A stretch of 64,000 nt of DNA from positions 248,001-312,000 of IMG/VR virus record IMGVR_UViG_3300027759_000045. The stretch is one strand, 5' to 3'. Shown here one piece after another: positions 921 through 46,230 of the stretch. How positions within the stretch are numbered: the first letter of the stretch is position 1; each line of letters starts with the position of its first letter. A program made the translations under genes and the position numbers. The notes beneath the pieces were generated by a model that was not told where the DNA came from, did no database searches, and saw only the letters and a program-made list of their open reading frames with translations.

Positions 921-2057
921 ATGTCCAATTTCTACTGTGCCGCACCCTGGCGTGGCCTACATATAAACCCACGTGGTGATGTTAAAACCTGTTGTGCAGG
1001 TAATCCCAACATGCTGGGAAACTTAAACACTCAAAACATTGTTGAAATACTCAATAGTGATCTTATGTCTGAAATACGGTCAAGTTTGTCCCAGGGTATT
1101 CCTCATGAGTATTGTTCAAATTGTGTAAAAGCAGAACGCTTTGGTGCAGACTCTGAGCGGGCCTGGCACAACAATGTAAATCCTGGGTTTGATTATGCCA
1201 CTGCTGGCAGTGAATATCATTATCCTGTTATTGTAGATGTACGGTGGAATACAACATGTAATTTAAGTTGTAACTATTGCGGCGAAGCCTGCAGTTCAAA
1301 GTGGGCTGGCCTAAAAGGTATTCCAGTCAAGTCAGGCACAAGACCTTACTATGATGCAGTGTGTGATTTTATTGAACAACACTATGAACACATACACGAA
1401 GTGGCATTGGTTGGCGGCGAGCCACTGTTACTGCCAGAGAATAATCGACTGCTAGATGTAATACCAAAAGATGCAATTGTTACACTGATTACAAATCTCA
1501 GTGGCGAACTTGAAAACAACAAAATATTTCAAAAGTTAGCAACACGAAATCGAGTTGGCTGGAGCATGAGCTTTGACAACATTGGTGAAAGATTGGAATA
1601 TGTGCGTCACGGCGCCGAGTGGTCGCAGATCAAACACAATCTTGGGTTGATCAAAGGATTAATGACCGCACAGGGCCAGTGGGGAGGCATACATGCTGTG
1701 TACAACATCTACAATGCCACACGTATTTGTGAACTGCGACAGTTTGCAGAAGACACTGGAACTACAGTGCTGTGGCAGAACCTATTTCAGCCTGAATACC
1801 TAGATCCGTTCTTGCATGGTCCAGTAGTTGCGGCCGAAGCCATTGCCGAGATTGAACGTTTCTATGCAATGGGCATTGCTACCACTGCTGAAAAAATGTT
1901 CTTTGACAATGCACTAGACATGTATCACAAGGTCACACAAGCCCGCCCTGGAATTGAACAACAATTCCGTGATCATATTTTTCTAAACGAAACCAAGTAT
2001 CACACAGATAAACATGGACAGTTCCAGCAGTTATGGCCGGAGTTCACCAATGTTTGA
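921..2057 (+). CDS. Radical SAM protein with N-terminal twitch domain
   Basis: CAAPW..KTCC and CSNC..E...SER; CNLSCNYC; GGEPLL; SFDNIGERLEYVRHG. Confidence 0.9.
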   Translation: MSNFYCAAPWRGLHINPRGDVKTCCAGNPNMLGNLNTQNIVEILNSDLMSEIRSSLSQGIPHEYCSNCVKAERFGADSERAWHNNVNPGFDYATAGSEYHYPVIVDVRWNTTCNLSCNYCGEACSSKWAGLKGIPVKSGTRPYYDAVCDFIEQHYEHIHEVALVGGEPLLLPENNRLLDVIPKDAIVTLITNLSGELENNKIFQKLATRNRVGWSMSFDNIGERLEYVRHGAEWSQIKHNLGLIKGLMTAQGQWGGIHAVYNIYNATRICELRQFAEDTGTTVLWQNLFQPEYLDPFLHGPVVAAEAIAEIERFYAMGIATTAEKMFFDNALDMYHKVTQARPGIEQQFRDHIFLNETKYHTDKHGQFQQLWPEFTNV

Positions 2058-9307: not shown

Positions 9308-9577
9308 ATGGCAGTAGATTTAGCAAGCGAAATTTGGAATGAACTCAAACGGTATGTTAACACAGTAGATCGTGCAGAAGCTGCAGAAACTGTGGTACAG
9401 ATCTTGATGGACAATGATGCAGACGTAGAAGATATCCGTGCAGCCTTCAAGGGCGATTCGGATATCAAACGTGCGCTAACCGCATATCTTGACAACGATA
9501 AAGATTATGTAGACGAAGAAGATGCCGAAGAAGACGAAGACTTTGATGACTTTGATGACAAAGACTGGGAAGATTAA
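9308..9577 (+). CDS. Small hypothetical protein with acidic tail
   Basis: 89 aa, GGAA RBS, coupled to uvsX. Confidence 0.7.
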   Translation: MAVDLASEIWNELKRYVNTVDRAEAAETVVQILMDNDADVEDIRAAFKGDSDIKRALTAYLDNDKDYVDEEDAEEDEDFDDFDDKDWED

Positions 9578-10812
9578 TGTCTTTAAAAAAATACTTCCCG
9601 ATTAACTCACAAACCAGTTGTAGGTCAAAATGGTCGTGGAGTACATTATATTTAAATAAAGGTGCTACCGCATCGTGTCATAGGGCTAGTGTTTCTAGTA
9701 TACCAGAAAATTTTGAAGACTTTCATAACACTCCTATTAAAATACAGGATAGGAGTGTTATGTTACAATCTCAATGGCCCGGCAACGGGTGTGAATATTG
9801 TCAAGATATTGAACACAGCGGAGGTATTAGTGATCGTATGTTTCAAAATCAAATTCCAAATGTATACCCTAAAGAACTTGATCAAGACAATACGTTAACT
9901 GTAGTTAATCCTGCGGTGTTAGAAGTATTTTTTTCTAACACCTGTAATCTATCATGCATTTATTGTGATGCAAAACATAGTTCATCAATTCAAGCCGAAA
10001 ATAAAAAGTTTGGAGGTGCAATACTTCCTGAATTAAACTTTGAATACACTGATAACAAATATCGCGAGCTTGTTCCAAAATTTTGGGCATGGCTTGAAAC
10101 ACATAGCCTATCCTTACAACGATTACAAATTTTAGGTGGTGAGCCCTTCTTACAACCTGATGTGTTGAAGCTGATTGAATATTTTGAACAACATCCGCAC
10201 CCAGACCTAGAGTTTAATTTGGTTACCAACCTTATGTTGCCAATCAAGGTTATAGAACCTATATTGAAAAAACTAAGAGATCTAAAACAACAAAATAAGC
10301 TGAAACGAATTGATATCCAAGTCAGTGTCGATTGCTGGGGATCCGCACAAGAATACACACGGCATGGATTTATGTTAGATATTTTTGATCGTAACATGGA
10401 GTTGTTAATCGAAATGTCTGAATTTCGAATCGGCCTATTGTCAACTATAACTTCACTGTCGATTCCCAGCATGCCCGAGTTAGCACAAAAATACAATCAA
10501 TGGTGTACAAAACAAAAAATATTTTGGTACATGCATTTGGTTCTACCTAATAACAAAAGTGTGTTTGATCCCACTATGTTTGATTACTCTGTATTTGCCT
10601 CTAGCTTAGAATCTGTGTATAATTTATTACCTAAGGAAACTTGGGATGACAAAACCACTCTTGAAAGTTTTGATGGCATTGTATCTAAACTAAAAAACAA
10701 ATGTAAAACAGACCTTATAAGACAACAAGGTCTGTTGCAATATCTTGACACCAACGATTACAGAAGAAAGACCAAATGGAAAGACATTTTTTCCTGGTTA
10801 ACAATAGGATAA
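9577..10812 (+). CDS. Radical SAM protein with N-terminal twitch domain
   Basis: SCRSKW..ASCH, CEYC..IE..SDR; CNLSCIYC; GGEPFL; SVDCWGSAQEYTRHG. Confidence 0.9.
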   Translation: MSLKKYFPINSQTSCRSKWSWSTLYLNKGATASCHRASVSSIPENFEDFHNTPIKIQDRSVMLQSQWPGNGCEYCQDIEHSGGISDRMFQNQIPNVYPKELDQDNTLTVVNPAVLEVFFSNTCNLSCIYCDAKHSSSIQAENKKFGGAILPELNFEYTDNKYRELVPKFWAWLETHSLSLQRLQILGGEPFLQPDVLKLIEYFEQHPHPDLEFNLVTNLMLPIKVIEPILKKLRDLKQQNKLKRIDIQVSVDCWGSAQEYTRHGFMLDIFDRNMELLIEMSEFRIGLLSTITSLSIPSMPELAQKYNQWCTKQKIFWYMHLVLPNNKSVFDPTMFDYSVFASSLESVYNLLPKETWDDKTTLESFDGIVSKLKNKCKTDLIRQQGLLQYLDTNDYRRKTKWKDIFSWLTIG

Positions 10813-23902: not shown

Positions 23903-25051
23903 ATGACCCCGCTAAAATGTTTTCACTTGGATCACGGGTATTCAAGCCTGACTTCGTCGCCGTGTTGCCAAGTAGAGATTCCCGGTAATCGTTCTACTTC
24001 TGGTAACAGAATTGACAGTTTTTCGACATTGCATAAAAACAAGCATTATATCGAAATAAAACAAAGTATGGATCAAGGCATATGGCACGATCTATGCAAC
24101 ACATGTCGTGTTGTTGAAGCACGGAAAGGTGACACACTCTCGTATCGACAACATTCACTACCCAAATATCACATGCCACCCTATGATATAAATGATGGAT
24201 TAATTGATATACAGCTGGCTCCGGGCTATTTGTGCAATATTCAATGCAGGTCTTGTACTCCGGCTCTTAGCAGTAGTTGGATCAACGAAAGTAGAGATAT
24301 GCCAGTAACCCTGGCCGCTCCTGGTACACAACATTATGCCATGAAGAATGACATTAAGTTTTCGACTATAAAAGTTTTGCCGAGTCCAGTGTATGATTAT
24401 ACCAAAGACGATTGGTCATCTGTAAAATATGCAAGTTTTGTCGGAGGCGAGCCGATATATAATCCTGAATTTTATGTTCAATTAAAAAAATTGTTTAACG
24501 AAACTAACGGATCAGCTGTGATAAGTTTTGCCACAAATGGAACTATTCCATTGGACTTGACAAAGTATCCGTGGATTGCTGATTTTAAAAATATTCAAGT
24601 TAATTTCAGTATCGATTCAATTGGCAGTAGCGCAGAGTTTATTCGAACTGGAACTGTCTGGAGCAAAGTTGAAAAGAATATACAATTTTACAAATCAATG
24701 AATATTGACACTGCGTACCACATGACAAATAGTGTGTTAAATATATTAGACACAAATAGAACAATAGACTATTTAGAATCCATAAATATTTGCAGTAGCA
24801 AATTAGTAACGCATGTTATTGATCCTGTCTATCTGAATTATAGTGTATTAACCGAAGATGAAAAATTAAAAATTATAGAACGAATCCGTGGTACCAACGC
24901 TGACTATATCATCTCAGCATTGACTGATTGCGAATACAATCCAGATAATCGATCAAAATTCTTTCTGTTTATGGAGCACACAAAAAATTACCATAGTATG
25001 GATTGGAAAGATTACCTGCCGGATCTGTATAATATCATGAATGAGGCTTGA
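23903..25051 (+). CDS. Radical SAM protein with N-terminal twitch domain
   Basis: SPCC, CNTC..VE..SYR; CNIQCRSC..SSSW; GGEPI; TNGT; SIDSIG. Confidence 0.88.
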   Translation: MTPLKCFHLDHGYSSLTSSPCCQVEIPGNRSTSGNRIDSFSTLHKNKHYIEIKQSMDQGIWHDLCNTCRVVEARKGDTLSYRQHSLPKYHMPPYDINDGLIDIQLAPGYLCNIQCRSCTPALSSSWINESRDMPVTLAAPGTQHYAMKNDIKFSTIKVLPSPVYDYTKDDWSSVKYASFVGGEPIYNPEFYVQLKKLFNETNGSAVISFATNGTIPLDLTKYPWIADFKNIQVNFSIDSIGSSAEFIRTGTVWSKVEKNIQFYKSMNIDTAYHMTNSVLNILDTNRTIDYLESINICSSKLVTHVIDPVYLNYSVLTEDEKLKIIERIRGTNADYIISALTDCEYNPDNRSKFFLFMEHTKNYHSMDWKDYLPDLYNIMNEA

Positions 25052-26287: not shown

Positions 26288-26736
26288 TGAGCGATAAACT
26301 AAACATTGCCAATGAGATGCAACAGTTTGATCGTAAGAATCGAGACTTTTACAATGAGCTGTCAGATGAAGAACGCAAGAAATTCTCAAACTTTTTAATG
26401 TTGCGATGGGGTAGTGCAGTAGAAGGGTCAAGGGAACTGCAGGAGTTTTATGTCATTGCACTGAATGAACGCTTTAACAAACACTTCTTTACACTGAGTA
26501 AACATCCAGGACTGCAATGGCTGTGTGCCACAACAGTGAGTCCTGGCATGGGCACACCGAGGCATACCTGGATTGCTCCTAAGAAAAAAGAACCCGGAGC
26601 CAGTGGCATACGCAAGCAGTTGGCAGAGATGTATCCGCATCTCAAAGACGATGACATTGCGGTGCTGGCGTCAATCACCACCAAAAAAGAAATTGACGAG
26701 CACATGAAGTTGTTAGGGCAAGACACTAAAAAATGA
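26287..26736 (+). CDS. Putative clamp-loader small subunit (gp62-like)
   Basis: ERKKFSNFLMLRWGS, ALNERFNKHFFTL pattern; replication context. Confidence 0.45.
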   Translation: MSDKLNIANEMQQFDRKNRDFYNELSDEERKKFSNFLMLRWGSAVEGSRELQEFYVIALNERFNKHFFTLSKHPGLQWLCATTVSPGMGTPRHTWIAPKKKEPGASGIRKQLAEMYPHLKDDDIAVLASITTKKEIDEHMKLLGQDTKK

Positions 26737-27407
26737 GTTACACCTGTCAGTATTGTCGGAAAGACTTTGTCAAGGAAACAAGTCTCACTGTGCATAGTTG
26801 TGAGCCACGTCGTCGTAGACAGGAACGTTCGGAGCGTGGAGTCGAACTGGGTTTTCAAGCCTACATTAAGTTTTATGAAATGACACAGGGCAGTGCCAAA
26901 CTAAAGTCATTTGATGACTTTGCTGACTCACCGTACTACCGAGCATTTGTAAAGTTTGGTCGATACTGTGTGTCCATACGTGCTATTAACCCTGCACGTT
27001 TTATGGAATGGGTACTGAAACAAAACAAAAAGATTGATCACTGGTGCCGCGATGCTGTATACACAGAATATTTGATATACTATTTGCAAGTAGAAAACAT
27101 CAACGATGCACTGGCTCGTGCAATGGAGTACAGCATCGACTGGGCAGAGAAAACAGGCAATCCCGCTCAGGACTGTTTACGCTATGGCGGCACCAATGCC
27201 ACTGTGTATGCAGTGACAACAGGTCGTATCAGTCCTTGGGTAATTTACAACTCAGAGTCCGGACAACGGTTTTTAAGTACCTTGGATGCTGGTCAGATTG
27301 CCATGGTTTGGCCATACATTGACTCGGATGTCTGGCAGAAAAAGTTTACGGATTACTCTGCAGACCAAGAGTATGCTAAAGAAATATTAACACAGGCAGG
27401 ATGGTAA
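26733..27407 (+). CDS. Zinc-finger-containing hypothetical protein
   Basis: YTCQYCRKDF..ETSLTVHSC at the N-terminus. Confidence 0.6.
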   Translation: MSYTCQYCRKDFVKETSLTVHSCEPRRRRQERSERGVELGFQAYIKFYEMTQGSAKLKSFDDFADSPYYRAFVKFGRYCVSIRAINPARFMEWVLKQNKKIDHWCRDAVYTEYLIYYLQVENINDALARAMEYSIDWAEKTGNPAQDCLRYGGTNATVYAVTTGRISPWVIYNSESGQRFLSTLDAGQIAMVWPYIDSDVWQKKFTDYSADQEYAKEILTQAGW

Positions 27408-27408
27408 C

Positions 27409-28323
27409 ATGATTCAAATTGACTTTCAAGGTGGCGCACATGGAAACTTCTTAGAATTTATTTGCAATACATTGTGTGGGCTGACCGATGATCAATTGCC
27501 GTTTAATAGTGCAGGCGCATCTCATGCAAAGAAGTATACTGGAAGAAAGACTTTTTTTTCCGATCATTATTCTTTTCTTAAAAAAGAACTGGGAGAAAAA
27601 GTTATTAGTATTCAGATTGCCGAAGATGATTTATTGCCGCTTAATCAAATTAGTTTATTAAGAGCTGGCGACCATGGATATGATAATGACTATCTTGAAA
27701 TGGACACCTACAATAAACTTAATAATGATAGTTATCGTTGGGTACTAGATAACATCATTGCCAATTTCTTTAAAGGACAAATTCAAACCAGTTACAATAA
27801 CGTTAAAGATGTGTCATGGCCCGATATACACACACTTGATGATTTTATCCTGTTGCCGGAGCATATACGTAATGAGTGTATTAATGTTCATAATTTAGAA
27901 TTATTAGAACTTAACAAAGACCATCCGGATTGTCCAAGGCACGTACTCAGAGAATTTTTTCAATTAGGATTTGAAAATCCTAGCCAACAAGGGTTTATTC
28001 AACAACAACACACAATGATTAATTATGGTAATAGACAAGTTTATATTTTTCCTTTCCGTTGTTTTTATGACACAGATTTATTCCTTGATCAAATCAAACA
28101 GATTGCTCAATGGGCGGAAATACCATATACTCAACACGATAAGATAGTCAAAATCCACAGTGAATTTTTAAAACGACAACCATACAAGCACAGTAAAATT
28201 AAATGTGATGTAATGGTGCAAGATATAATATCTAATAGACCAACAGGAAGTGCTCGAGATCTATTAGAAGAAGCGTACATAAACGCACAATTAAAAAAGC
28301 ATAATCATGAGTGCAGATATTGA
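27409..28323 (+). CDS. Sulfotransferase-like/P-loop protein with KDxSWP module
   Basis: IDFQGGAHGNFL N-terminal loop; AT-rich; module shared with 44122-44940. Confidence 0.4.
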   Translation: MIQIDFQGGAHGNFLEFICNTLCGLTDDQLPFNSAGASHAKKYTGRKTFFSDHYSFLKKELGEKVISIQIAEDDLLPLNQISLLRAGDHGYDNDYLEMDTYNKLNNDSYRWVLDNIIANFFKGQIQTSYNNVKDVSWPDIHTLDDFILLPEHIRNECINVHNLELLELNKDHPDCPRHVLREFFQLGFENPSQQGFIQQQHTMINYGNRQVYIFPFRCFYDTDLFLDQIKQIAQWAEIPYTQHDKIVKIHSEFLKRQPYKHSKIKCDVMVQDIISNRPTGSARDLLEEAYINAQLKKHNHECRY

Positions 28324-28885
28324 CATTGACTTTGCAGACCGCAGTCAACTACTTGAATTAATCCAGCACACACCTGCACGTCAAACGGTGCAAGGGCAGG
28401 CACGCAGGCACAACTCGGGTGTGTATGTAACAGACATTCCGCAGGATCCTGTGAATCGTTGTGCGGCCATCGACTACGAAGCTGCCGAACAACTGGGTTA
28501 TTTTAAAATTGACTTTTTGAACATGAGTGTTTATCAGTTGATTACCAGTCCAGAACACTATGCCACAGCAGTGGCCACAGAACCTGCTTGGTCCCAGCTG
28601 TGGCAAGAACCAGAATGGGCAAAACAACTAGCACACGTTGGCAACTATACAGACCTGCTGAGCGCAATGCGCCCGGATAGTATTCCAAGAATGGCAGCGT
28701 TTATCAGTATCATTAGGCCAGGCAAGGCACACTTGCAACGGCAGCCCTGGGACATGGTGTTTGATTCTGTGTGGGATGGTGATGAAAGTCGAGGCTACAC
28801 ATTTAAGAAAAGCCACGCAATCAGTTACGCAGCCTTGGTAGCATTACACATGAACCTGCTCAGTCCATCCGTCGCACAAGCGTAA
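28307..28885 (+). CDS. Minimal family-C (DnaE/PolIII alpha-like) polymerase catalytic domain
   Basis: DIDIDF, RRHNSG, FKIDFL, IRPG, YTFKKSHAISYA in 192 aa. Confidence 0.8.
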   Translation: MSADIDIDFADRSQLLELIQHTPARQTVQGQARRHNSGVYVTDIPQDPVNRCAAIDYEAAEQLGYFKIDFLNMSVYQLITSPEHYATAVATEPAWSQLWQEPEWAKQLAHVGNYTDLLSAMRPDSIPRMAAFISIIRPGKAHLQRQPWDMVFDSVWDGDESRGYTFKKSHAISYAALVALHMNLLSPSVAQA

Positions 28886-29237
28886 TGCTTTTGCGTTTGC
28901 CTTTTTTCAGTGCAATATCAGCAAGGCTACACACAGGACCGTGTAAGATTTCCAAGTCTTTGTTGGCAAATGTGCGTAGACAAGGACGGAATACATCCCA
29001 GTCTTTCTTTAAGAAGATATTGATGGGAATACTTCTATTGCTCTCCCACCACCAGGCATTGGCCAACTCTAGAAATCTTTGTTTCAGCACAGGGTCGTGT
29101 ATGCTGCCAAAGTCGTATATGGTGGTAACTGACACGTCTTGATTCTGCACAATGCCCACATACTCCGTGGAAGCATATACACACAGTGTAATAAAGGGGT
29201 ATTGTTCGCTGAGTTTAGTAAAGATATCATTGGCCAT
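28860..29237 (-). CDS. Conserved hypothetical protein
   Basis: 125 aa, EYVGIVQN, WWWESNRSIPINIFL; TAAATA on the minus strand upstream. Confidence 0.7.
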   Translation of the reverse strand: MANDIFTKLSEQYPFITLCVYASTEYVGIVQNQDVSVTTIYDFGSIHDPVLKQRFLELANAWWWESNRSIPINIFLKKDWDVFRPCLRTFANKDLEILHGPVCSLADIALKKGKRKSITLVRRMD

Positions 29238-30461: not shown

Positions 30462-31430
30462 ATGATCGACGTGTTGGCATTTTTACCAGGCAAAAGAAAA
30501 CAGTCTAGTTCTGGGTGGATTTCCTTCAACGCACCTTGTTGCGTACACACTGGCAACACACCCGATCGTCGTGGACGTGGTGGTATCAAACTGTCTGACC
30601 AGGGCTGGAGTTATCATTGTTTTAACTGTGGCTATACTGCAAGTTTTATTCTTGGACGCAATATCGGATTCAAAGCACGACGCTTGCTGGAATGGATAGG
30701 CGTTCCTGAAAACGATATCAATCAGATCAATCTTGAAAGCATGCGACATCGTAGCATGGAAGGCATGATTGAAGATCGTCAGCGTGTTTGGAATAATCTT
30801 GCACCGATTGAGTTTAACGAAGCAGAGTTGCCGCCATTTGTGGATTTTGTAACACCAGACCGATCTGAGCATTGGGCATATCTCAGGAACAGACATGTGC
30901 CAGAAGACTATCCTGTTATGGTATCGGCCGCAAACCCAACTCGTCCTAGTGTAGTGGTTCCGTTTACATACAACAATCAAGTGGTAGGTAGTACCATACG
31001 TTTCCTGGATGATCGCAATCCACGGTACATTAACGACATGCAGAAGGGCTACGTGTTTGGCATAGATCTACAGCAAGCAGGATGGCAAAATGTAATTGTG
31101 ACAGAAGGTATCTTTGACGCACTCAGTATAAGTGGTGTGGCTGTGATGCACAACGAAATCAGTGATGATCAAGCAAGACTAATACGTAGCCTAGGACGCA
31201 ATGTCGTTGTGGTCCCAGATCAAGACAAGGCAGGCGTGGCATTAATCGATCGTGCTGTGGAACTGGGATGGAGTGTAAGCATTCCGGACTGGCCACCCGG
31301 CGTTAAAGATATCAACGATGCTGTGAAACTCTGGGGCAAGTTGACAACTTTGCTAACTATTATGCAAGCAAAAGAAACCAGTAAGATCAAAATAGAACTA
31401 AGGAAACGACAACTTGTCAAACGAATATAA
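30462..31430 (+). CDS. DNA primase (zinc finger plus TOPRIM)
   Basis: APCC..YHCFNCG, VTEGIFDA, VPDQDKAG, KDIND. Confidence 0.9.
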   Translation: MIDVLAFLPGKRKQSSSGWISFNAPCCVHTGNTPDRRGRGGIKLSDQGWSYHCFNCGYTASFILGRNIGFKARRLLEWIGVPENDINQINLESMRHRSMEGMIEDRQRVWNNLAPIEFNEAELPPFVDFVTPDRSEHWAYLRNRHVPEDYPVMVSAANPTRPSVVVPFTYNNQVVGSTIRFLDDRNPRYINDMQKGYVFGIDLQQAGWQNVIVTEGIFDALSISGVAVMHNEISDDQARLIRSLGRNVVVVPDQDKAGVALIDRAVELGWSVSIPDWPPGVKDINDAVKLWGKLTTLLTIMQAKETSKIKIELRKRQLVKRI

Positions 31431-32514
31431 CAACTGGTGTCCGGAAGTTTATCGTAGTTTATATGTTGACCGGCATAATGACAATCAACTTCAAGTTGCA
31501 CCTTGTTGTCAGGCAACTATACAAACAGTGCCAGTTGAAAATTTTAATTTTAATACAAACGAGTACTTGCAGTCAATTAGGCAACAATTTGCAGATGGAA
31601 AAAAGCCACTGGCCTGTTCGAGATGCTGGCAAGATGAAAATGCTGGCAAGAAAAGTAGAAGATTAAGTGCTATAGAATTTTTTGAACTGCCAACTGAATC
31701 CGACACAGTGATATTAGAAAGTGTTGATCACAGTGCAACATGGGCATGTAATTTAGGTTGCATCATGTGTGGCCCACAGAACTCTAGCACATGGGCGACA
31801 GAACTTAATATATCACAAAAATCGTTATCGGCAATGGGTAGAAAATTTCAAAAGCAAAATAAGTTATTTGATTATTTAGATCTAACTAATGTTAAAAAAA
31901 TACATTTTAACGGCGGCGAGCCAATGCTTAACAATGATCAATTTAATATACTAAAGAGTATTGATTTATCAAATGCTTTTGTGAGTTATAACACAAACGG
32001 AACGGTGTATCCTAGTCTAGACATAATTAATTTGTGGGAAAAAACAAAATTAGTAAAATTGTTCTTTAGTGTAGACGCAACTGATACAGCATTTGAGTAT
32101 GTCAGACACCCTGGAAAATGGGATACGTTAGTTAATAATATCAACCGTATGCGTAAAGAATTACCTGGAAATATCATGTTTGGGTTTAACGTAACTGTGG
32201 GAAATTATAATGTACTTGAAATGCCACTGGTATATGAATGGTTTATGGAAAATTTATCTACAAATAGAGAAGGCGATAGTAGTGACTTTTGTTGGCAACT
32301 CGCATATAATTATAATGTAACTGATCTTTTGCCAAATATAAAACAGGAAGCAATGTCTGCACTGTCCTCAATTGATCAGTTTAGTGGACTTGTAAAAATT
32401 TTAAAATCTACAATGAATAGTCACAATGATAATTGGATACAAGGGTTGAATCAAATTGATCAGAGAAGAAACACAAGTTGGAAAAAAAGTTTGCAAATTG
32501 GAAAGTACTATTAA
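31414..32514 (+). CDS. Radical SAM protein with N-terminal twitch domain
   Basis: WCPEV..APCC, CSRCWQDE..SRR; CNLGCIMC..SSTW; GGEPML; TTG start. Confidence 0.88.
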   Translation: MSNEYNNWCPEVYRSLYVDRHNDNQLQVAPCCQATIQTVPVENFNFNTNEYLQSIRQQFADGKKPLACSRCWQDENAGKKSRRLSAIEFFELPTESDTVILESVDHSATWACNLGCIMCGPQNSSTWATELNISQKSLSAMGRKFQKQNKLFDYLDLTNVKKIHFNGGEPMLNNDQFNILKSIDLSNAFVSYNTNGTVYPSLDIINLWEKTKLVKLFFSVDATDTAFEYVRHPGKWDTLVNNINRMRKELPGNIMFGFNVTVGNYNVLEMPLVYEWFMENLSTNREGDSSDFCWQLAYNYNVTDLLPNIKQEAMSALSSIDQFSGLVKILKSTMNSHNDNWIQGLNQIDQRRNTSWKKSLQIGKYY

Positions 32515-32517
32515 ACA

Positions 32518-33957
32518 ATGTTAAAAGATTATGGATTAGAAGTCCAGAGATTATTCTTAGAAATGATGTTGGAAGACGCCAGCAGTTATGTGCGTGTTCA
32601 AAACATTTATAATCCACAAAACTTTGACCGGAGCCTGCAGCCGGCGGCTGAGTTCATTAAAGAGCACACGGACAAGCATAAAACTATGCCTGACAAGTTG
32701 CAGATTAGTGCAACTACAGGAATCAAACTGCAACCTGTGCCAGATTTGAACGAAGGACACTTTGATTGGTTCATGACCGAGTTTGAAGGCTTTACCAAGC
32801 GTCAAGAACTTGAACGTGCTATTCTTAAAAGTGCAGACTTGTTAGAAAAGGGAGAGTTTGAGCCAGTTGAGAAACTGATCAAAGACGCAGTACAGATATC
32901 TCTTACAAAAGACATGGGCACAGATTACTTTGCTGATCCTGCGAGTCGTATCAACCGATACTTTAACTCAGGCGGCCAAGTAAGCACAGGATGGCCACAA
33001 CTAGACCGGCTGTTGTATGGTGGATTCAGTCGTGGTGAACTGAACATCTTTGCAGGCGGATCTGGTTCGGGTAAAAGTTTAGTAATGATGAACATTGCGT
33101 TGAACTGGCTACAGCAAGGACTTAGTGGTGTGTACGTTACACTAGAACTCAGTGAAGAACTTACCAGTTTACGTACAGATGCTATGTTGACCAATATGTC
33201 AACAAAGGATATCCGTAAAGACATTGACACAACTGAACTCAAAGTTAAACTAGTTGCTAAGAAGTCTGGCCAGTATCGTGTTAAGGCATTACCGGCGCAA
33301 AGCAACATTAACGACATCCGTAGTTATATCAAAGAAGTACAGATCCAAACAGGGATCCGAGTAGACTTCCTGATGATTGACTATTTGGACTTGCTAATGC
33401 CAGTTAGTGCTAAAGTTAGCCCCAACGACTTGTTTGTTAAAGACAAGTATGTTTCAGAAGAACTGCGTAACTTAGCCAAGGAACTGGGTGTGCTGATGGT
33501 TACTGCATCGCAGTTAAATCGTAGTGCTGTTGAAGAGATTGAATTTGACCACAGTCATATTTCAGGCGGTATCAGTAAAATTAACACAGCAGATAATGTG
33601 TTTGGTATCTTTACTTCACGTGCTATGAAAGAACGTGGCAAGTATCAGATCCAGTGTATGAAATCTCGAAGCTCGACCGGCGTTGGTCAAAAAATTGATT
33701 TGGAGTATAACATTGAAACTATGCGCATTACTGATGAAGGTGGGGACGAAGGGACAGGGTACAACCGACCCCAAAGTTCACTTATGGACTCAATCAAAGC
33801 AAAAAGCCAACTCAAGTCTGCTGACACCACAGAAGACAAATCCCCACCGTGGGAAAAAGCCACAGGAACTCCTGCTTGGGAACAGCCAGCAAAAGTAACA
33901 GGCGATGTGCAAAGTGCTAAATTAAAACAACTGCTCGGTCAGATTAAAAATACTTAA
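32518..33957 (+). CDS. gp41: Replicative DnaB-like helicase (gp41)
   Basis: GGSGSGKS, VTLEL, IDYLDL, TASQLNR, MKSRSS. Confidence 0.93.
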   Translation: MLKDYGLEVQRLFLEMMLEDASSYVRVQNIYNPQNFDRSLQPAAEFIKEHTDKHKTMPDKLQISATTGIKLQPVPDLNEGHFDWFMTEFEGFTKRQELERAILKSADLLEKGEFEPVEKLIKDAVQISLTKDMGTDYFADPASRINRYFNSGGQVSTGWPQLDRLLYGGFSRGELNIFAGGSGSGKSLVMMNIALNWLQQGLSGVYVTLELSEELTSLRTDAMLTNMSTKDIRKDIDTTELKVKLVAKKSGQYRVKALPAQSNINDIRSYIKEVQIQTGIRVDFLMIDYLDLLMPVSAKVSPNDLFVKDKYVSEELRNLAKELGVLMVTASQLNRSAVEEIEFDHSHISGGISKINTADNVFGIFTSRAMKERGKYQIQCMKSRSSTGVGQKIDLEYNIETMRITDEGGDEGTGYNRPQSSLMDSIKAKSQLKSADTTEDKSPPWEKATGTPAWEQPAKVTGDVQSAKLKQLLGQIKNT

Positions 33958-33961
33958 GATA

Positions 33962-35035
33962 TTAACATTCTATTAGCATATTATGTAATTCAGGCAAATA
34001 ATCTTTCATCTGAATTTTTTTAGATGTATCTTGTATTTTAATTTGTTCAAGCATCATTTGAAAATTTTGTTGATCTTGGTTGGTGTGTATTGGTCCTAAG
34101 AAAGTATTATAATCAACTGCAGATAATTGACTTTTTAATAATTTCTTAATTGATTCTGACAGTGCTCTAGGCTGTAACCAACTTGGATTATATACCGGGC
34201 TTACCGAGTACACTATATTATTTTCATTAAACCATTTGATGGTTTTGTTATGATATAAAATATTTAAATTGCTCAATGTGTAATTTGAACTAATATTGTC
34301 AGTTAATTCTCGAAAAAATGTTAGATTGTTAGTAAGATCTGTCCAGTCAAGTGGATATCTCATGTATTCAAATACAGATTCTATTCCGTCGATGCTGACA
34401 GAAAAATTAAGATTCTTAAATTTTGATAAGACTTGTTTTTGCCTGGAAGTTAATTCTACACTGCCGTTAGTTACTATACTCAAAAATACTTCAGTATTTC
34501 CCAATTCAACAAGATATTTTAATAACTCAAAATTTTTCTTTTCATACAAAGGTTCACCGCCGATTAGACTTAATATTTTAAGTTCTTTAAAATTAACTTT
34601 TTCTTTTATCTTGTCTATATCAACAAATTTATTTGAGTTTGGCGGAATATCTAAATCAATGCGCTTGGCCAACTGTGCCCAACTGCTACTACAGTTAGGG
34701 CTACAGCTTATACAAGTTGCATTACAAGTATTACTGGTAAACAATTTGAGAATTAAGATATCATTTAATTTGCCGTTGGTTGCATCTTGTTTTATAGATT
34801 CTAGATCCCTATCCCAATAAAAATCTAATGCACTATTTTTTACTTGTCGATCACTTTTTGATCCATATTCTTCAAGATTCCAACATTTTTGACACGCCGA
34901 ACTTTTAACTCCTGATAACAAGTCTGATTTAATTTGATCAATGTTGTAATTTCGAGGTAGTAAACAGCAATGTGTTTCTTGGCCATTCCAAACTACTTCT
35001 TTTCCTACCCAGGGTAAAACACAAAATGTATCCAT
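33962..35035 (-). CDS. Radical SAM protein with N-terminal twitch domain
   Basis: FCVLPW..THCC, CQKCW..E..SDR; CNATCISC..SSSW; GGEPLY; very AT-rich. Confidence 0.88.
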   Translation of the reverse strand: MDTFCVLPWVGKEVVWNGQETHCCLLPRNYNIDQIKSDLLSGVKSSACQKCWNLEEYGSKSDRQVKNSALDFYWDRDLESIKQDATNGKLNDILILKLFTSNTCNATCISCSPNCSSSWAQLAKRIDLDIPPNSNKFVDIDKIKEKVNFKELKILSLIGGEPLYEKKNFELLKYLVELGNTEVFLSIVTNGSVELTSRQKQVLSKFKNLNFSVSIDGIESVFEYMRYPLDWTDLTNNLTFFRELTDNISSNYTLSNLNILYHNKTIKWFNENNIVYSVSPVYNPSWLQPRALSESIKKLLKSQLSAVDYNTFLGPIHTNQDQQNFQMMLEQIKIQDTSKKIQMKDYLPELHNMLIEC

Positions 35036-44946: not shown

Positions 44947-46230
44947 ATGATTACCCAAACAATTGAATGGATTAAAAATAATCCTACATTTTGCACAGCA
45001 CCATATTCTGCCTACGATTTTAGATTCAACGTTGGCAAATTTAAAGTTACTACGTGCTGTAATTTAGACGTGTCCAAGACCAACCAAGCACTGGATTTTA
45101 ATTTTATAGAAAACGTCAAACAAGACATGTCACAAGGACTAGTGCCCAAGGCTTGTTGGCGTTGTGCGTCCGAAGAACAAAACCAAGCACAGTCTGAACG
45201 TGTAAAGTACATGCTAGGACACACCGTTGCTGAATTAGAACAGTTTAAGGAAAATAAAAAAACAAACGAATTTCAAGTTGGTATGAAGTTTAGCAATCTT
45301 TGCAACTTAGCTTGTCGTAGTTGTAACGAAACTGACAGTAGTTTATGGGCCAAATTAATGAATACGCCTGCGCCTCCTGAATATGAAATTGACACGTCAA
45401 CAGACCAGTTTCTTTGGGATCAAATGACCAATATGATTCGTTCTAAACATAAAGAAACTGATAATTTCATTGTACATCCAATTGGCGGAGAAACAATGAT
45501 TCAACCAGGATTTTTAAAATTAGTTGATTGGTTGATTGAAGAAAATTTAGCCAACACCACTACACTACGAATTACCACCAGTCTTGTGCCCAGTATATCT
45601 GAAAAGTTTTCTGCAAAATTTGCACAGTTTCGCCGCATAGAATTTCTTTCCAGCATCGACAGCATTGGAGAAAATTATCATTACGTCCGTTGGCCTGCCA
45701 GGTTCAACAAAATAGAAGATAACCTGGAAACATTCAATCTGTTGAGTCGGCAATATCCTGGCAAATTTTCCTTGTCGGTCAGCCCGGTATTTTCATTAAA
45801 TAACATTTTTTATGCAGTGGACTATCTTGATTGGTGGAAACGCTGGGCCGACCAAACACAAACTGATTTATGGATGTCAAACATACACTTGTATAATCCT
45901 GAGCCATTGATGGTGGAAAGTTTATCATTACAATACTACCCGCAACTGATTGAACTGTTAGAGCAATGTGTAAACCACACAGTATTTAAAAAATACACAC
46001 GCACTGCTGTGCTGAAAGAATTCTTTGTTGCCATGCTTGCAACAATTTCTAATAACAAAAACAACAACAACGAGTTGCGTTTTCAAGAGTACCTGAAGTT
46101 CACTGCAGATTATGATAATCGCACAACCACCGATAGCTACACCTTAAATTCTAAACTGTTTGATTTACTGTCAGACTCCCATAAACATATATACAACTCT
46201 CATTTGCAACATGTACAATCCAAAATTTAA
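44947..46230 (+). CDS. Radical SAM protein with N-terminal twitch domain
   Basis: FCTAPY..TTCC, CWRC..E..SER; CNLACRSC..SSLW; GGET; SIDSIG. Confidence 0.88.
   Translation: MITQTIEWIKNNPTFCTAPYSAYDFRFNVGKFKVTTCCNLDVSKTNQALDFNFIENVKQDMSQGLVPKACWRCASEEQNQAQSERVKYMLGHTVAELEQFKENKKTNEFQVGMKFSNLCNLACRSCNETDSSLWAKLMNTPAPPEYEIDTSTDQFLWDQMTNMIRSKHKETDNFIVHPIGGETMIQPGFLKLVDWLIEENLANTTTLRITTSLVPSISEKFSAKFAQFRRIEFLSSIDSIGENYHYVRWPARFNKIEDNLETFNLLSRQYPGKFSLSVSPVFSLNNIFYAVDYLDWWKRWADQTQTDLWMSNIHLYNPEPLMVESLSLQYYPQLIELLEQCVNHTVFKKYTRTAVLKEFFVAMLATISNNKNNNNELRFQEYLKFTADYDNRTTTDSYTLNSKLFDLLSDSHKHIYNSHLQHVQSKI

What the first reader, a model, noticed from the sequence alone, without database searches (positions are those of the whole stretch)
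28307..28885. 192-aa minimal family-C polymerase retaining all three catalytic aspartates
Seen: DIDIDF, H-x-SG, KIDFL, RPG and Y-x-FKKSHA-x-SYA in order. Known: E. coli DnaE uses D401/D403 (DxD) and D555 (KFDFL) and is over 1000 aa with PHP, thumb, clamp-binding and OB domains, all missing here. It lies near gp62-like, Zn-finger, primase and helicase genes. Inference: a primer-extension or hand-off enzyme, a subunit completed in trans by 26733-27407, or a repurposed nucleotidyltransferase. Similar short DnaE-like ORFs are, as I recall, annotated in other jumbo phages but uncharacterised.
Basis: partly seen in the sequence, partly recalled or inferred. Interest (0 to 1): 0.65.

Follow-up and report, generated by a model that had tools for sequence, protein, structure and literature searches.

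The report
Half of a split mini-polymerase III
This 192-residue gene is the magnesium-binding half of a stripped-down, two-piece relative of the bacterial replicative DNA polymerase; the family was described by sequence analysis in jumbo phages in 2021, its other half lies far away in the same phage genome, and its activity has never been tested.

Summary
The ORF and all five motifs are real. It is a true but highly reduced homologue of Pol III alpha (DnaE). A family profile hits only DnaE chains in the PDB. The AF2 model (pLDDT 93.5) aligns over 183-191 of 192 residues to E. coli DnaE 399-781, Z 6.0-9.3.

It is not a self-contained polymerase, because it lacks the first strand and the Gly-Ser triphosphate-binding motif of the palm. 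Those lie in a separate 169-aa gene at genome 27,960-28,469, 248 kb upstream of the window ORF and about 98 kb the other way round. That gene ends at EFLR, matching E. coli ERFL392. The window ORF starts three residues before the aspartate that matches D401.

- The split site is fixed in 85 of 85 relatives, and no fused form was found in 235 loci.
- Both halves occur in the same ~93-96 cultured jumbo phages.
- Both are under purifying selection (dN/dS 0.11 and 0.21).
- They are predicted to bind (ipSAE 0.91; best control 0.02).

Iyer et al. 2021 (PMC7824862) already described this split minimal Pol III alpha in group 2.2 jumbo phages. I found no biochemistry. The verdict is a new member of a known, uncharacterised kind.

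The parts
28307..28885 (+). C-half of the split minimal Pol III alpha-like enzyme (192 aa, PHROG 11778). It carries the metal-binding palm strands plus a reduced fingers base.
   Evidence: ORF. phrog_11778 'DNA polymerase' E 3.9e-52. AF2 pLDDT 93.5. Foldseek top 18 hits are all Pol III alpha or PolC. VIA Z 9.3-6.0 to E. coli DnaE 399-781, Taq 460-839 and Mtb 418-811, with the next unrelated fold at Z 3.7. dN/dS median 0.11.
28316..28333 (+). DIDIDF strand (residues 4-9). D4 and D6 match E. coli D401 and D403; D8 matches D405.
   Evidence: Colinear HMM alignment to DnaE. Invariant in alignments A1 and A4. Predicted to pair with N-half residues 134-135 of WGVGRGS.
28409..28420 (+). HNSG (residues 35-38) in the beta-hairpin after the DxD strand.
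   Evidence: H35 and G38 are 100% conserved in 208 sequences. Their equivalents in DnaE were not established here.
28505..28519 (+). KIDFL (residues 67-71), holding the third catalytic aspartate D69 and K67.
   Evidence: Aligned to KMDFL of M. tuberculosis DnaE1. phrog_405 (full-length DnaE) positions 577-608 match residues 49-80. K67 and D69 are 100% conserved, and neither was part of any search pattern that gathered those sequences.
28715..28726 (+). RPGK (residues 137-140), the fingers-base motif.
   Evidence: Aligned to the ALFRPG / ALYRPG motif of E. coli and Mtb DnaE. R137, P138 and K140 are 100% conserved.
28796..28831 (+). YTFKKSHAISYA (residues 164-175). K168, S169 and H170 match E. 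coli K758, S759 and H760.
   Evidence: Aligned to GYGFNKSHSAAYA of E. coli DnaE 753-765. Residues 167-170 are in the predicted interface with the N-half.
26733..27407 (+). C2H2 Zn-finger protein (224 aa, phrog_11058), a conserved upstream neighbour. It is not the missing half.
   Evidence: phrog_11058 E 9e-53. Only weak Zn-finger Pfam hits. Immediately upstream of the C-half in PA5oct; one small gene intervenes in CBB and two in Atu_ph07; elsewhere in XacN1. Found in 92 phage records.
27409..28323 (+). 304-aa lineage-specific ORF inserted between the Zn-finger gene and the C-half. It overlaps the C-half start by 17 nt.
   Evidence: No Pfam, PHROG or cultured-phage match. Present in about 8 of 238 related loci. 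Contigs of other runs lack it exactly or carry other sequence in its place.
28860..29237 (-). Convergent 125-aa gene (phrog_11637) overlapping the last 26 nt of the C-half.
   Evidence: phrog_11637 E 3e-31. The same tail-to-tail overlap occurs in PA5oct, CBB and Atu_ph07. Found in 89 phage records.
30462..31430 (+). DnaG/Toprim-type primase (context).
   Evidence: TIGR01391 E 2.9e-9. Toprim_2.
32518..33957 (+). DnaB-family replicative helicase (context).
   Evidence: TIGR03600 phage_DnaB E 2e-21.

Best explanation
Window 28307-28885 encodes the C-terminal, Mg2+-binding half of the split minimal Pol III alpha-like nucleotidyltransferase of group 2.2 jumbo phages.

What each half supplies:
- The C-half supplies the two palm strands with the three carboxylates (D4, D6, D69) and a cut-down fingers base (K67, R137-P138-G139-K140, K168-S169-H170).
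- The N-half is a separate 169-aa protein encoded at genome 27,960-28,469, outside the window. It supplies the preceding palm helices, the first strand and the Arg-Gly-Ser motif (R138, G139, S140, matching E. coli R362, G363, S364). In Pol-beta-fold enzymes that motif holds the incoming nucleotide's triphosphate.

How they combine: the N-half stops at the position of E. coli L392 and the C-half begins at about residue 398. The two chains are therefore predicted to assemble non-covalently by completing one beta-sheet, rebuilding a single active site.

What is missing: the heterodimer (about 360 aa) has no PHP domain, no thumb, no HhH clamp-binding domain, no OB domain and no tau-binding domain. 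The genome also has a complete T4-type family B replicase.

Status of each claim:
- Shown here: homology, the split, co-occurrence, purifying selection.
- Predicted: heterodimer formation.
- Inferred: two-metal nucleotidyl transfer onto a 3'-OH. The most likely form is short, distributive, template-directed DNA synthesis that assists the family B replisome, for example primer extension, gap filling or repair. I put templated DNA synthesis at about 0.5.
For: Homology of the C-half:
- PHROG 11778 'DNA polymerase', E 3.9e-52, plus partial hits to full-length DnaE PHROGs.
- The PDB profile search hits only DnaE.
- The AF2 model has pLDDT 93.5.
- The Foldseek top 18 hits are all Pol III alpha or PolC.
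- VIA gives Z 9.3-6.0 with 183-191 of 192 residues aligned to E. coli 399-781.

The N-half:
- PF07733 hit in the same genome. It is a 169-aa ORF ending ...GVGRGSS...EFLR.
- PF07733 scores 30.7 bits against a cut-off of 23.9; phrog_11127 E 1.2e-40.
- Residues 126-168 align to E. coli 350-392.
- The AF2 model has pLDDT 86.3; VIA Z 12.1-7.5 to E. coli 278-393.

Fixed split:
- 84 of 85 N-half ORFs stop 29 residues after GxGRGS and one stops at 30, always at EFL[KR].
- None of 235 C-half loci has GRGS upstream in frame.

Co-occurrence:
- 96 phage records have the C-half and 93 have the N-half, with the same host-genus counts.
- 8 of 10 long IMG/VR records with a C-half have an N-half, including 5 of 5 that are at least 97% complete.

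Other lines:
- Binding: ipSAE 0.91 in three runs, best of 3 controls 0.02. That mark was reached by 58 of 80 solved complexes and 2 of 110 mismatched pairs. Runs agree in at least 97% of contacts and partner pLDDT is at least 91. N residues 130-143 touch C residues 3-10 and 167-170.
- Selection: NG86 dN/dS median 0.11 for C (472 pairs) and 0.21 for N (167 pairs).
- No other DnaE parts in the complete genome: PHP, DNA_pol3_finger and HHH_6 are all absent.
- A complete family B polymerase is present, 885 aa with exonuclease and polymerase domains.
- Prior description: PMC7824862.
Against: - No activity, complex or structure has been measured for any member. I found none in the paper library.
- The complex score is a model's confidence. 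It may partly reflect memory of intact DnaE structures, and my own alignments were used, so the calibration holds only roughly.
- The thumb, HhH domain and most of the fingers, which hold primer-template DNA in Pol III alpha, are missing. Stable templated synthesis is therefore not assured.
- One 90%-complete record with a C-half (G005) gave no N-half match.
- Transcription of this copy is not shown. Only tiny contigs of relatives appear in a metatranscriptome library.
Confidence: 0.8

Rival explanations
1. The N+C heterodimer is catalytic but is not a templated DNA polymerase. It would be a repurposed Pol-beta-fold nucleotidyltransferase, for example a template-independent 3'-tailing enzyme, an rNTP-using enzyme, or a maker of a nucleotide signal or DNA modification.
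For: The thumb, HhH clamp-binding, OB and most finger elements that grip primer-template DNA are absent. A complete family B replicase already exists in the genome. By established knowledge, the Pol-beta-like superfamily holds many non-polymerase transferases.
Against: The similarity is specifically to Pol III alpha, including the fingers motifs RPG and FxKSHxxxYA that lie outside the generic transferase core. Both genes sit in replication modules: primase and helicase beside the C-half, clamp loader near the N-half in PA5oct, CBB, XacN1 and Atu_ph07.
Confidence: 0.25
2. The 192-aa protein is a self-sufficient minimal family C polymerase.
For: All three catalytic aspartates and the fingers motifs are present.
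Against: It lacks the first palm strand and the Gly-Ser motif, because the model begins at E. coli residue 399. That part is encoded by a co-occurring separate gene whose end abuts the C-half's start in DnaE numbering. The predicted interface has 153-158 contacts.
Confidence: 0.03
3. The neighbouring Zn-finger protein (26733-27407) is the partner that completes the enzyme in trans.
For: Conserved as a close upstream neighbour of the C-half: immediately upstream in PA5oct, and one or two small genes away in CBB and Atu_ph07. The phyletic spread is similar, at 92 records.
Against: It has no similarity to any DnaE part. It is not adjacent in XacN1. Many core genes of this phage group share the same distribution, for example phrog_11637 in 89 records. 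The true missing palm half has been identified elsewhere.
Confidence: 0.05
4. It is a decaying remnant of a captured dnaE gene, or a non-catalytic structural subunit.
For: Extreme size reduction, and no Pfam hit for the C-half.
Against: dN/dS is 0.06-0.15 (5th-95th percentile). Catalytic residues are invariant at 32-96% identity. At least 7,946 related 90%-identity clusters exist in metagenomes. The gene boundaries are precise and conserved.
Confidence: 0.03

Closest known systems
Split minimal DNA polymerase III alpha of group 2.2 jumbo phages (Iyer, Anantharaman, Krishnan, Burroughs and Aravind, Viruses 2021, PMC7824862). Examples: PA5oct EST35_0220 and EST35_0288, CBB gp287 and gp328, RaK2, 121Q, Atu_ph07, XacN1.
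   Same: Same two PHROGs (11778 and 11127). Same split point and same lengths. Same synteny around the C-half: Zn-finger gene upstream, an antisense small gene, a structural protein, primase, then helicase. Same company of a family B polymerase and no other Pol III domains. C-half identity to cultured members is 26-43%.
   Different: This copy comes from an uncultured 346,856-bp freshwater phage. A 304-aa gene is inserted just upstream of the C-half and a radical-SAM gene lies between primase and helicase. The halves are about 98 kb or 248 kb apart, against 15-44 kb in PA5oct, CBB, RaK2 and XacN1.
Bacterial Pol III alpha (DnaE, PolC): E. coli 2HNH, T. aquaticus 2HPI/3E0D, M. tuberculosis DnaE1 5LEW/7PU7, G. 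kaustophilus PolC 3F2B.
   Same: Pol-beta-like palm with the RGS motif, the DxD pair and the third Asp. Fingers motifs RPG and FxKSHxxxYA in the same order. Structural alignment covers E. coli 278-393 (N-half) and 399-781 (C-half).
   Different: Two polypeptides instead of one. About 290 aligned residues plus a 72-aa phage-specific N-terminal extension, against 1,160 aa. No PHP, thumb, HhH, OB or tau-binding domain. DxD to the third Asp is 63 residues against 152. RPG to KSH is about 30 residues against about 117.
Split DnaE of cyanobacteria (dnaE-n / dnaE-c joined by a split intein); recalled from established knowledge.
   Same: The catalytic subunit of a family C polymerase is encoded by two distant genes.
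   Different: There the halves carry intein fragments and are ligated into one full-length chain. Here the N-half ends one residue after EFL and the C-half starts three residues before the first Asp. No intein blocks are present, so assembly must be non-covalent. The split also lies inside the palm core rather than further downstream.

Membership tests
Family C DNA polymerase catalytic subunit (Pol III alpha, DnaE/PolC) | Three catalytic carboxylates on the palm (E. coli D401, D403, D555) | tested here: met
   D4, D6 and D69 align to them and are invariant.
Family C DNA polymerase catalytic subunit (Pol III alpha, DnaE/PolC) | Gly-Ser triphosphate-binding motif (E. coli G363-S364) in the same polypeptide | tested here: not met
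   Absent from the 192-aa protein, whose model starts at E. coli 399. It is present as G139-S140 in the separate N-half.
Family C DNA polymerase catalytic subunit (Pol III alpha, DnaE/PolC) | Pfam PF07733 (DNA_pol3_alpha) above the gathering score | tested here: not met
   The C-half has no Pfam hit at E<=1. The N-half passes at 30.7 bits against 23.9.
Family C DNA polymerase catalytic subunit (Pol III alpha, DnaE/PolC) | N-terminal PHP domain | tested here: not met
   PF02811 is absent from the complete genome, while the control rings in 14 of 14 genomes.
Family C DNA polymerase catalytic subunit (Pol III alpha, DnaE/PolC) | Thumb, full fingers, HhH clamp-binding domain and OB domain | tested here: not met
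   PF17657 and PF14579 are absent. About 190 of the 383 residues of E. coli 399-781 have a counterpart. The protein ends 17 residues after the KSHxxxYA motif.
Family C DNA polymerase catalytic subunit (Pol III alpha, DnaE/PolC) | Template-directed dNTP polymerisation | not testable with these tools
   Needs biochemistry.
Split minimal Pol III alpha of group 2.2 jumbo phages (PMC7824862) | C-terminal unit of about 190 aa with the Mg2+-binding residues (PHROG 11778) | tested here: met
   phrog_11778 E 3.9e-52, covering 3-186 of 192 residues.
Split minimal Pol III alpha of group 2.2 jumbo phages (PMC7824862) | Separate N-terminal NTP-binding unit encoded by a distant gene of the same genome | tested here: met
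   Genome 27,960-28,469. phrog_11127 E 1.2e-40 and PF07733.
Split minimal Pol III alpha of group 2.2 jumbo phages (PMC7824862) | Jumbo genome that also has a family B polymerase and no other Pol III alpha domain | tested here: met
   346,856 bp with terminal repeats. Family B polymerase of 885 aa. PHP, fingers and HHH_6 are absent.
Split minimal Pol III alpha of group 2.2 jumbo phages (PMC7824862) | The two units are predicted to rebuild one catalytic domain | tested here: met
   In silico only. ipSAE 0.91 against a best control of 0.02. The GRGS strand of N touches the DIDIDF strand and KKSH of C.
Intein-split DnaE (cyanobacterial type) | Split-intein fragments at the junction | tested here: not met
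   The N-half stops 29 residues after GxGRGS at EFLR. The C-half has 3 residues before the first Asp and a stop 7 codons upstream. There is no room for intein blocks.

The most novel reading that the evidence does not exclude
The roughly 360-aa N+C heterodimer is an active, template-directed DNA polymerase that works without a thumb, a clamp-binding domain or a proofreading domain. That would make it by far the smallest family C polymerase, and the only one I know of whose Pol-beta-like catalytic core is assembled from two polypeptides. It would have a dedicated replisome task beside the family B enzyme, such as extending primase products or filling gaps. As Iyer et al. propose, it would also serve as a living model of the ancestral Pol III module.
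Probability: 0.4. Interest if true: 0.7.

Novelty: new member of a known kind. Interest (0 to 1): 0.4.

Why it matters
- If the heterodimer polymerises DNA, it defines the minimal functional core of the bacterial replicative polymerase family.
- It would show that a Pol-beta-fold active site can be rebuilt from two chains.
- It would give a second, bacterial-type polymerase to phages that otherwise replicate with an archaeo-eukaryotic-type family B enzyme. That bears on division of labour at phage replication forks and on the origin of family C polymerases.
- The family is very abundant in freshwater and marine viromes (at least 7,946 90%-identity clusters) yet has no assigned activity, so one biochemical study would annotate thousands of genes.
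- For this scan the finding itself is not new. The family and its split nature were published in 2021.

Tried and rejected
- Pfam on the C-half gave no hit.
- A single-sequence PDB search gave only a spurious multicystatin repeat match, E 0.006. The family profile was needed.
- NCBIfam gave only sub-threshold DnaE fragments, E 0.12-0.48.
- Megablast of the region against cultured phages found nothing.
- The first dN/dS script timed out and was rewritten.
- Fused single-chain forms were sought in 235 C-half loci and 85 N-half loci. None was found.
- Other DnaE domains in the genome (PHP, fingers, HHH_6) were sought and not found.
- The Zn-finger neighbour as partner is discounted for lack of any DnaE similarity and for non-adjacency in XacN1. 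Binding to it was not tested.
- Expression is inconclusive. Two metatranscriptome runs hold only about 5% of the sampled words. One (X19) covers nothing of the gene. The other (X20) gives short contigs from relatives at 28307-28360, which cannot show transcription.
- The PA5oct omics paper gives no gene-level statement on the two halves.
- Cellular genomes: of the 24 loci among 185,579 species genomes, all are in MAGs of scattered phyla and none is in an isolate. I read these as mis-binned phage contigs.
- The large representative-protein search was not used, because the family scans had settled the identity.
- Only genetic code 11 was used.
Full report
**Observation.** Window 28307-28885 (+) is a clean 192-aa ORF. 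A stop lies 7 codons upstream of the first aspartate. DIDIDF (4-9), HNSG (35-38), KIDFL (67-71), RPG (137-139) and YTFKKSHAISYA (164-175) are all present in that order. The window is bases 248,001-312,000 of a 346,856-bp virus record with terminal repeats, estimated complete.

**Homology to Pol III alpha.**
- Pfam finds nothing in the protein.
- PHROG 11778 ('DNA polymerase', a 197-position model) matches at E 3.9e-52. Two PHROGs of longer DnaE-type proteins match short stretches around KIDFL and KSH.
- A 38-sequence family profile (A4) searched against all PDB sequences returns nine sequences, all Pol III alpha (best E 8.8e-4). The blocks are colinear: MPDIDIDF, KMDFL...ALYRPG and FNKSHAAGY.
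- From that alignment, D4, D6 and D8 match E. coli D401, D403 and D405, and K168, S169 and H170 match K758, S759 and H760. D69 sits in the KxDFL block that holds E. coli D555.
- An AlphaFold2 model built on A4 is confident (pLDDT 93.5, pTM 0.82).
- The Foldseek top 18 PDB matches are all DnaE or PolC.
- VIA-align gives Z 9.3-6.0 with 183-191 of 192 residues aligned to E. coli DnaE 399-781, T. aquaticus 460-839, M. tuberculosis 418-811 and PolC 970-1299. The next, unrelated fold scores Z 3.7.
- Only about half of that 383-residue DnaE stretch has a counterpart. The distance from the DxD pair to the third Asp is 63 residues against 152, so the thumb is gone. RPG to KSH is about 30 residues against about 117. 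The protein ends 17 residues after the KSHxxxYA motif.

**The protein is only half of the catalytic core.**
- Searching the phage's own genome with PF07733 hit a different place, 28,251-28,472. That place is a 169-aa ORF at genome 27,960-28,469 (L001:1210-1719) ending ...IWGVGRGSSVASY...LDVEEFLR-stop.
- It passes the Pfam gathering score (30.7 against 23.9 bits) and matches PHROG 11127 'DNA polymerase' at E 1.2e-40.
- Its residues 126-168 align to E. coli 350-392, so R138, G139 and S140 match R362, G363 and S364, and the C-terminal EFL matches ERFL392.
- Its AF2 model (pLDDT 86.3) aligns over residues 73-169 to E. coli 278-393 at Z 12.1-7.5 and rmsd 2.1-2.6. Residues 1-72 have no structural match.
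- The N-half therefore ends at E. coli 392-393 and the window's C-half begins at about 398-399.
- The cut falls between the helix after the Gly-Ser motif and the DxD strand, inside the Pol-beta-like nucleotidyltransferase core. By established knowledge of that fold, neither half alone has a full active site.

**The split is old, fixed and selected.**
- Among 85 N-half ORFs from this genome, cultured phages and IMG/VR, 84 stop 29 residues after GxGRGS and one stops after 30, always at EFL[KR].
- Among 235 C-half loci the frame is open for at most 58 codons upstream of DxDxD, and none has GRGS there. No fused form was seen.
- There is no room for intein fragments at either end.
- tblastn finds the C-half in 96 cultured-phage records and the N-half in 93, with near-identical genus counts: Escherichia 34 and 34, Pseudomonas 11 and 11, Klebsiella 11 and 10, Salmonella 8 and 8, Erwinia 8 and 8.
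- In ten long IMG/VR records chosen for having a C-half, eight also have a separate N-half frame of 164-197 aa. That includes all five records that are at least 97% complete. The two without it are 90% and 60% complete.
- The genes are always far apart: 15-44 kb in XacN1, RaK2, CBB and PA5oct, 182 kb in Atu_ph07, and here 248 kb or about 98 kb around the circle.
- Pairwise Nei-Gojobori dN/dS is 0.11 (median of 472 pairs, 5th-95th percentile 0.06-0.15) for the C-half and 0.21 (167 pairs) for the N-half. Many pairs were saturated at synonymous sites, so these are rough values, but they are clearly purifying.
- The word-index search found at least 7,946 related 90%-identity clusters in metagenomes.

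**Predicted assembly.** The N-half (alignment A6) and C-half (A4) were folded together with controls. The score was ipSAE 0.91 in each of three runs, against a best of 0.02 among three controls. That mark was reached by 58 of 80 solved complexes and 2 of 110 mismatched pairs. The runs agree in at least 97% of contacts and partner pLDDT is at least 91. The tool's verdict is that the model supports binding but does not show it. My own alignments were used, and intact DnaE structures may be remembered by the model.

The interface is what a re-joined palm would need:
- N residues 130-143 (the WGVGRGSS strand and turn) lie against C residues 3-10 (DIDIDF) and 167-170 (KKSH).
- The N-half's C-terminus (166-169) lies near the C-half's N-terminus.
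- The phage-specific N-terminal part of the N-half (3-9, 29-32, 66-75) lies on C loop 41-49, which is where DnaE has its thumb.

**Genomic setting.**
- Around the C-half the order is: Zn-finger protein (phrog_11058), C-half, convergent small gene (phrog_11637) overlapping its 3' end, structural protein, primase, DnaB helicase. The same order holds in PA5oct, CBB and Atu_ph07, with one or two small genes between the Zn-finger gene and the C-half in CBB and Atu_ph07.
- XacN1 keeps only part of that order.
- The N-half is followed by a small ORF and a GroES-like gene. A clamp-loader gene lies close by in PA5oct, CBB, XacN1 and Atu_ph07.
- The genome has a complete T4-type family B polymerase of 885 aa with exonuclease and polymerase domains, phrog_262 E 4e-200.
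- PHP, DNA_pol3_finger and HHH_6 are absent, while the controls ring in 11-14 of 14 genomes.

**What is known.** Iyer et al. [quoted passage not shown] They suggest it may cooperate with the family B enzyme in synthesis of one strand or in repair. Weinheimer and Aylward (ISME J 2022, PMC9123017) note PF07733 as a marker of one cluster of marine jumbo phages. Four further literature searches found no biochemical or structural work.

Phage specificity holds in my scan of 185,579 species genomes. Only 24 loci were found, all in MAGs of scattered phyla and none in an isolate genome.

**Mechanism and confidence.** I put 0.8 on the identity: the C-half of a two-chain, non-covalently assembled minimal Pol III alpha-like nucleotidyltransferase, with D4, D6 and D69 binding the two metals and the N-half's RGS motif plus the C-half's K67, R137, K168 and H170 lining the nucleotide site. 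Homology, the split, co-occurrence and selection are shown; binding is predicted; catalysis is inferred from invariant residues.

I put about 0.5 on short, distributive, template-directed DNA synthesis. In favour are the Pol III-specific fingers motifs and the replication-module context. Against it, the loss of thumb, HhH and OB parts leaves a non-templated or otherwise repurposed transferase open (about 0.25). A stand-alone 192-aa polymerase, completion by the Zn-finger neighbour, and a decayed fragment are each unlikely, at 0.05 or less.

**Verdict.** The enzyme is completed in trans, but by a gene outside the window. It is a new member of a known, computationally described and experimentally untouched family.
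- The exact junction in DnaE numbering.
- The invariance of the split site and the absence of fused forms.
- Selection estimates for both halves.
- A controlled heterodimer prediction.

**Housekeeping.** Only genetic code 11 was used. The large representative-protein search was not used.

Noticed in passing
window 921-2057, 9577-10812, 23903-25051, 31414-32514, 33962-35035 (-), 44947-46230; also genome ~139.7k-150.7k, 191.6k, 318.1k, 337.9k, 340.4k: The phage carries at least 16 divergent radical-SAM paralogues (20-34% identity to one another, PF04055) scattered through the genome. One is wedged between primase and DnaB helicase, which are adjacent in PA5oct and CBB. I did not look for a published account of this expansion.
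   Followed up: partly
window 27409-28323 (+): A 304-aa ORF with no Pfam, PHROG or cultured-phage match lies between the Zn-finger gene and the C-half. It is present in only about 8 of 238 related loci. A contig in another run joins 27406 to 28307, exactly without it, and a near-identical strain has 1,130 other letters in its place. This looks like a variable cassette or insertion hot spot.
   Followed up: partly
window 28860-29237 (-): A convergent 125-aa gene (phrog_11637, function unknown) overlaps the last 26 nt of the C-half. The same tail-to-tail overlap (14-17 nt) is kept in PA5oct, CBB and Atu_ph07, and the gene is in 89 phage records.
   Followed up: partly
window 26733-27407 (+): A C2H2 Zn-finger protein (phrog_11058, 224 aa) is a core gene of this phage group (92 records) and lies just upstream of the C-half (adjacent in PA5oct, one or two small genes away in CBB and Atu_ph07). 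Its roughly 200-aa C-terminal part has no recognisable family. A possible accessory role with the split polymerase was not tested.
   Followed up: partly
genome 27,960-28,175 (L001:1210-1425), outside the window: The first 72 residues of the N-half have no structural match in the PDB hits. They are nonetheless predicted to contact C-half loop 41-49, the place where DnaE has its thumb. The N-half also evolves faster than the C-half: dN/dS is 0.21 against 0.11, and the nearest IMG/VR relative is 76% identical against 96%.
   Followed up: partly
L330, L331, L332 (genome contigs): The closest relatives of the C-half in 'cellular' assemblies (65-77% identity) sit in freshwater Bacteroidota MAGs (Haliscomenobacter, Lishizhenia). 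Runs holding the window are lake or freshwater metagenomes from about 20 studies. These are probably mis-binned phage contigs and at best a weak host hint.
   Followed up: no
G005 (IMG/VR record of L168, 291,658 bp, 90% complete): This XacN1-like record has a C-half at its very end but gave no N-half match at E<=0.001. The N-half may lie in the missing 10% or be too divergent for the model. It is the one candidate exception to co-occurrence.
   Followed up: no
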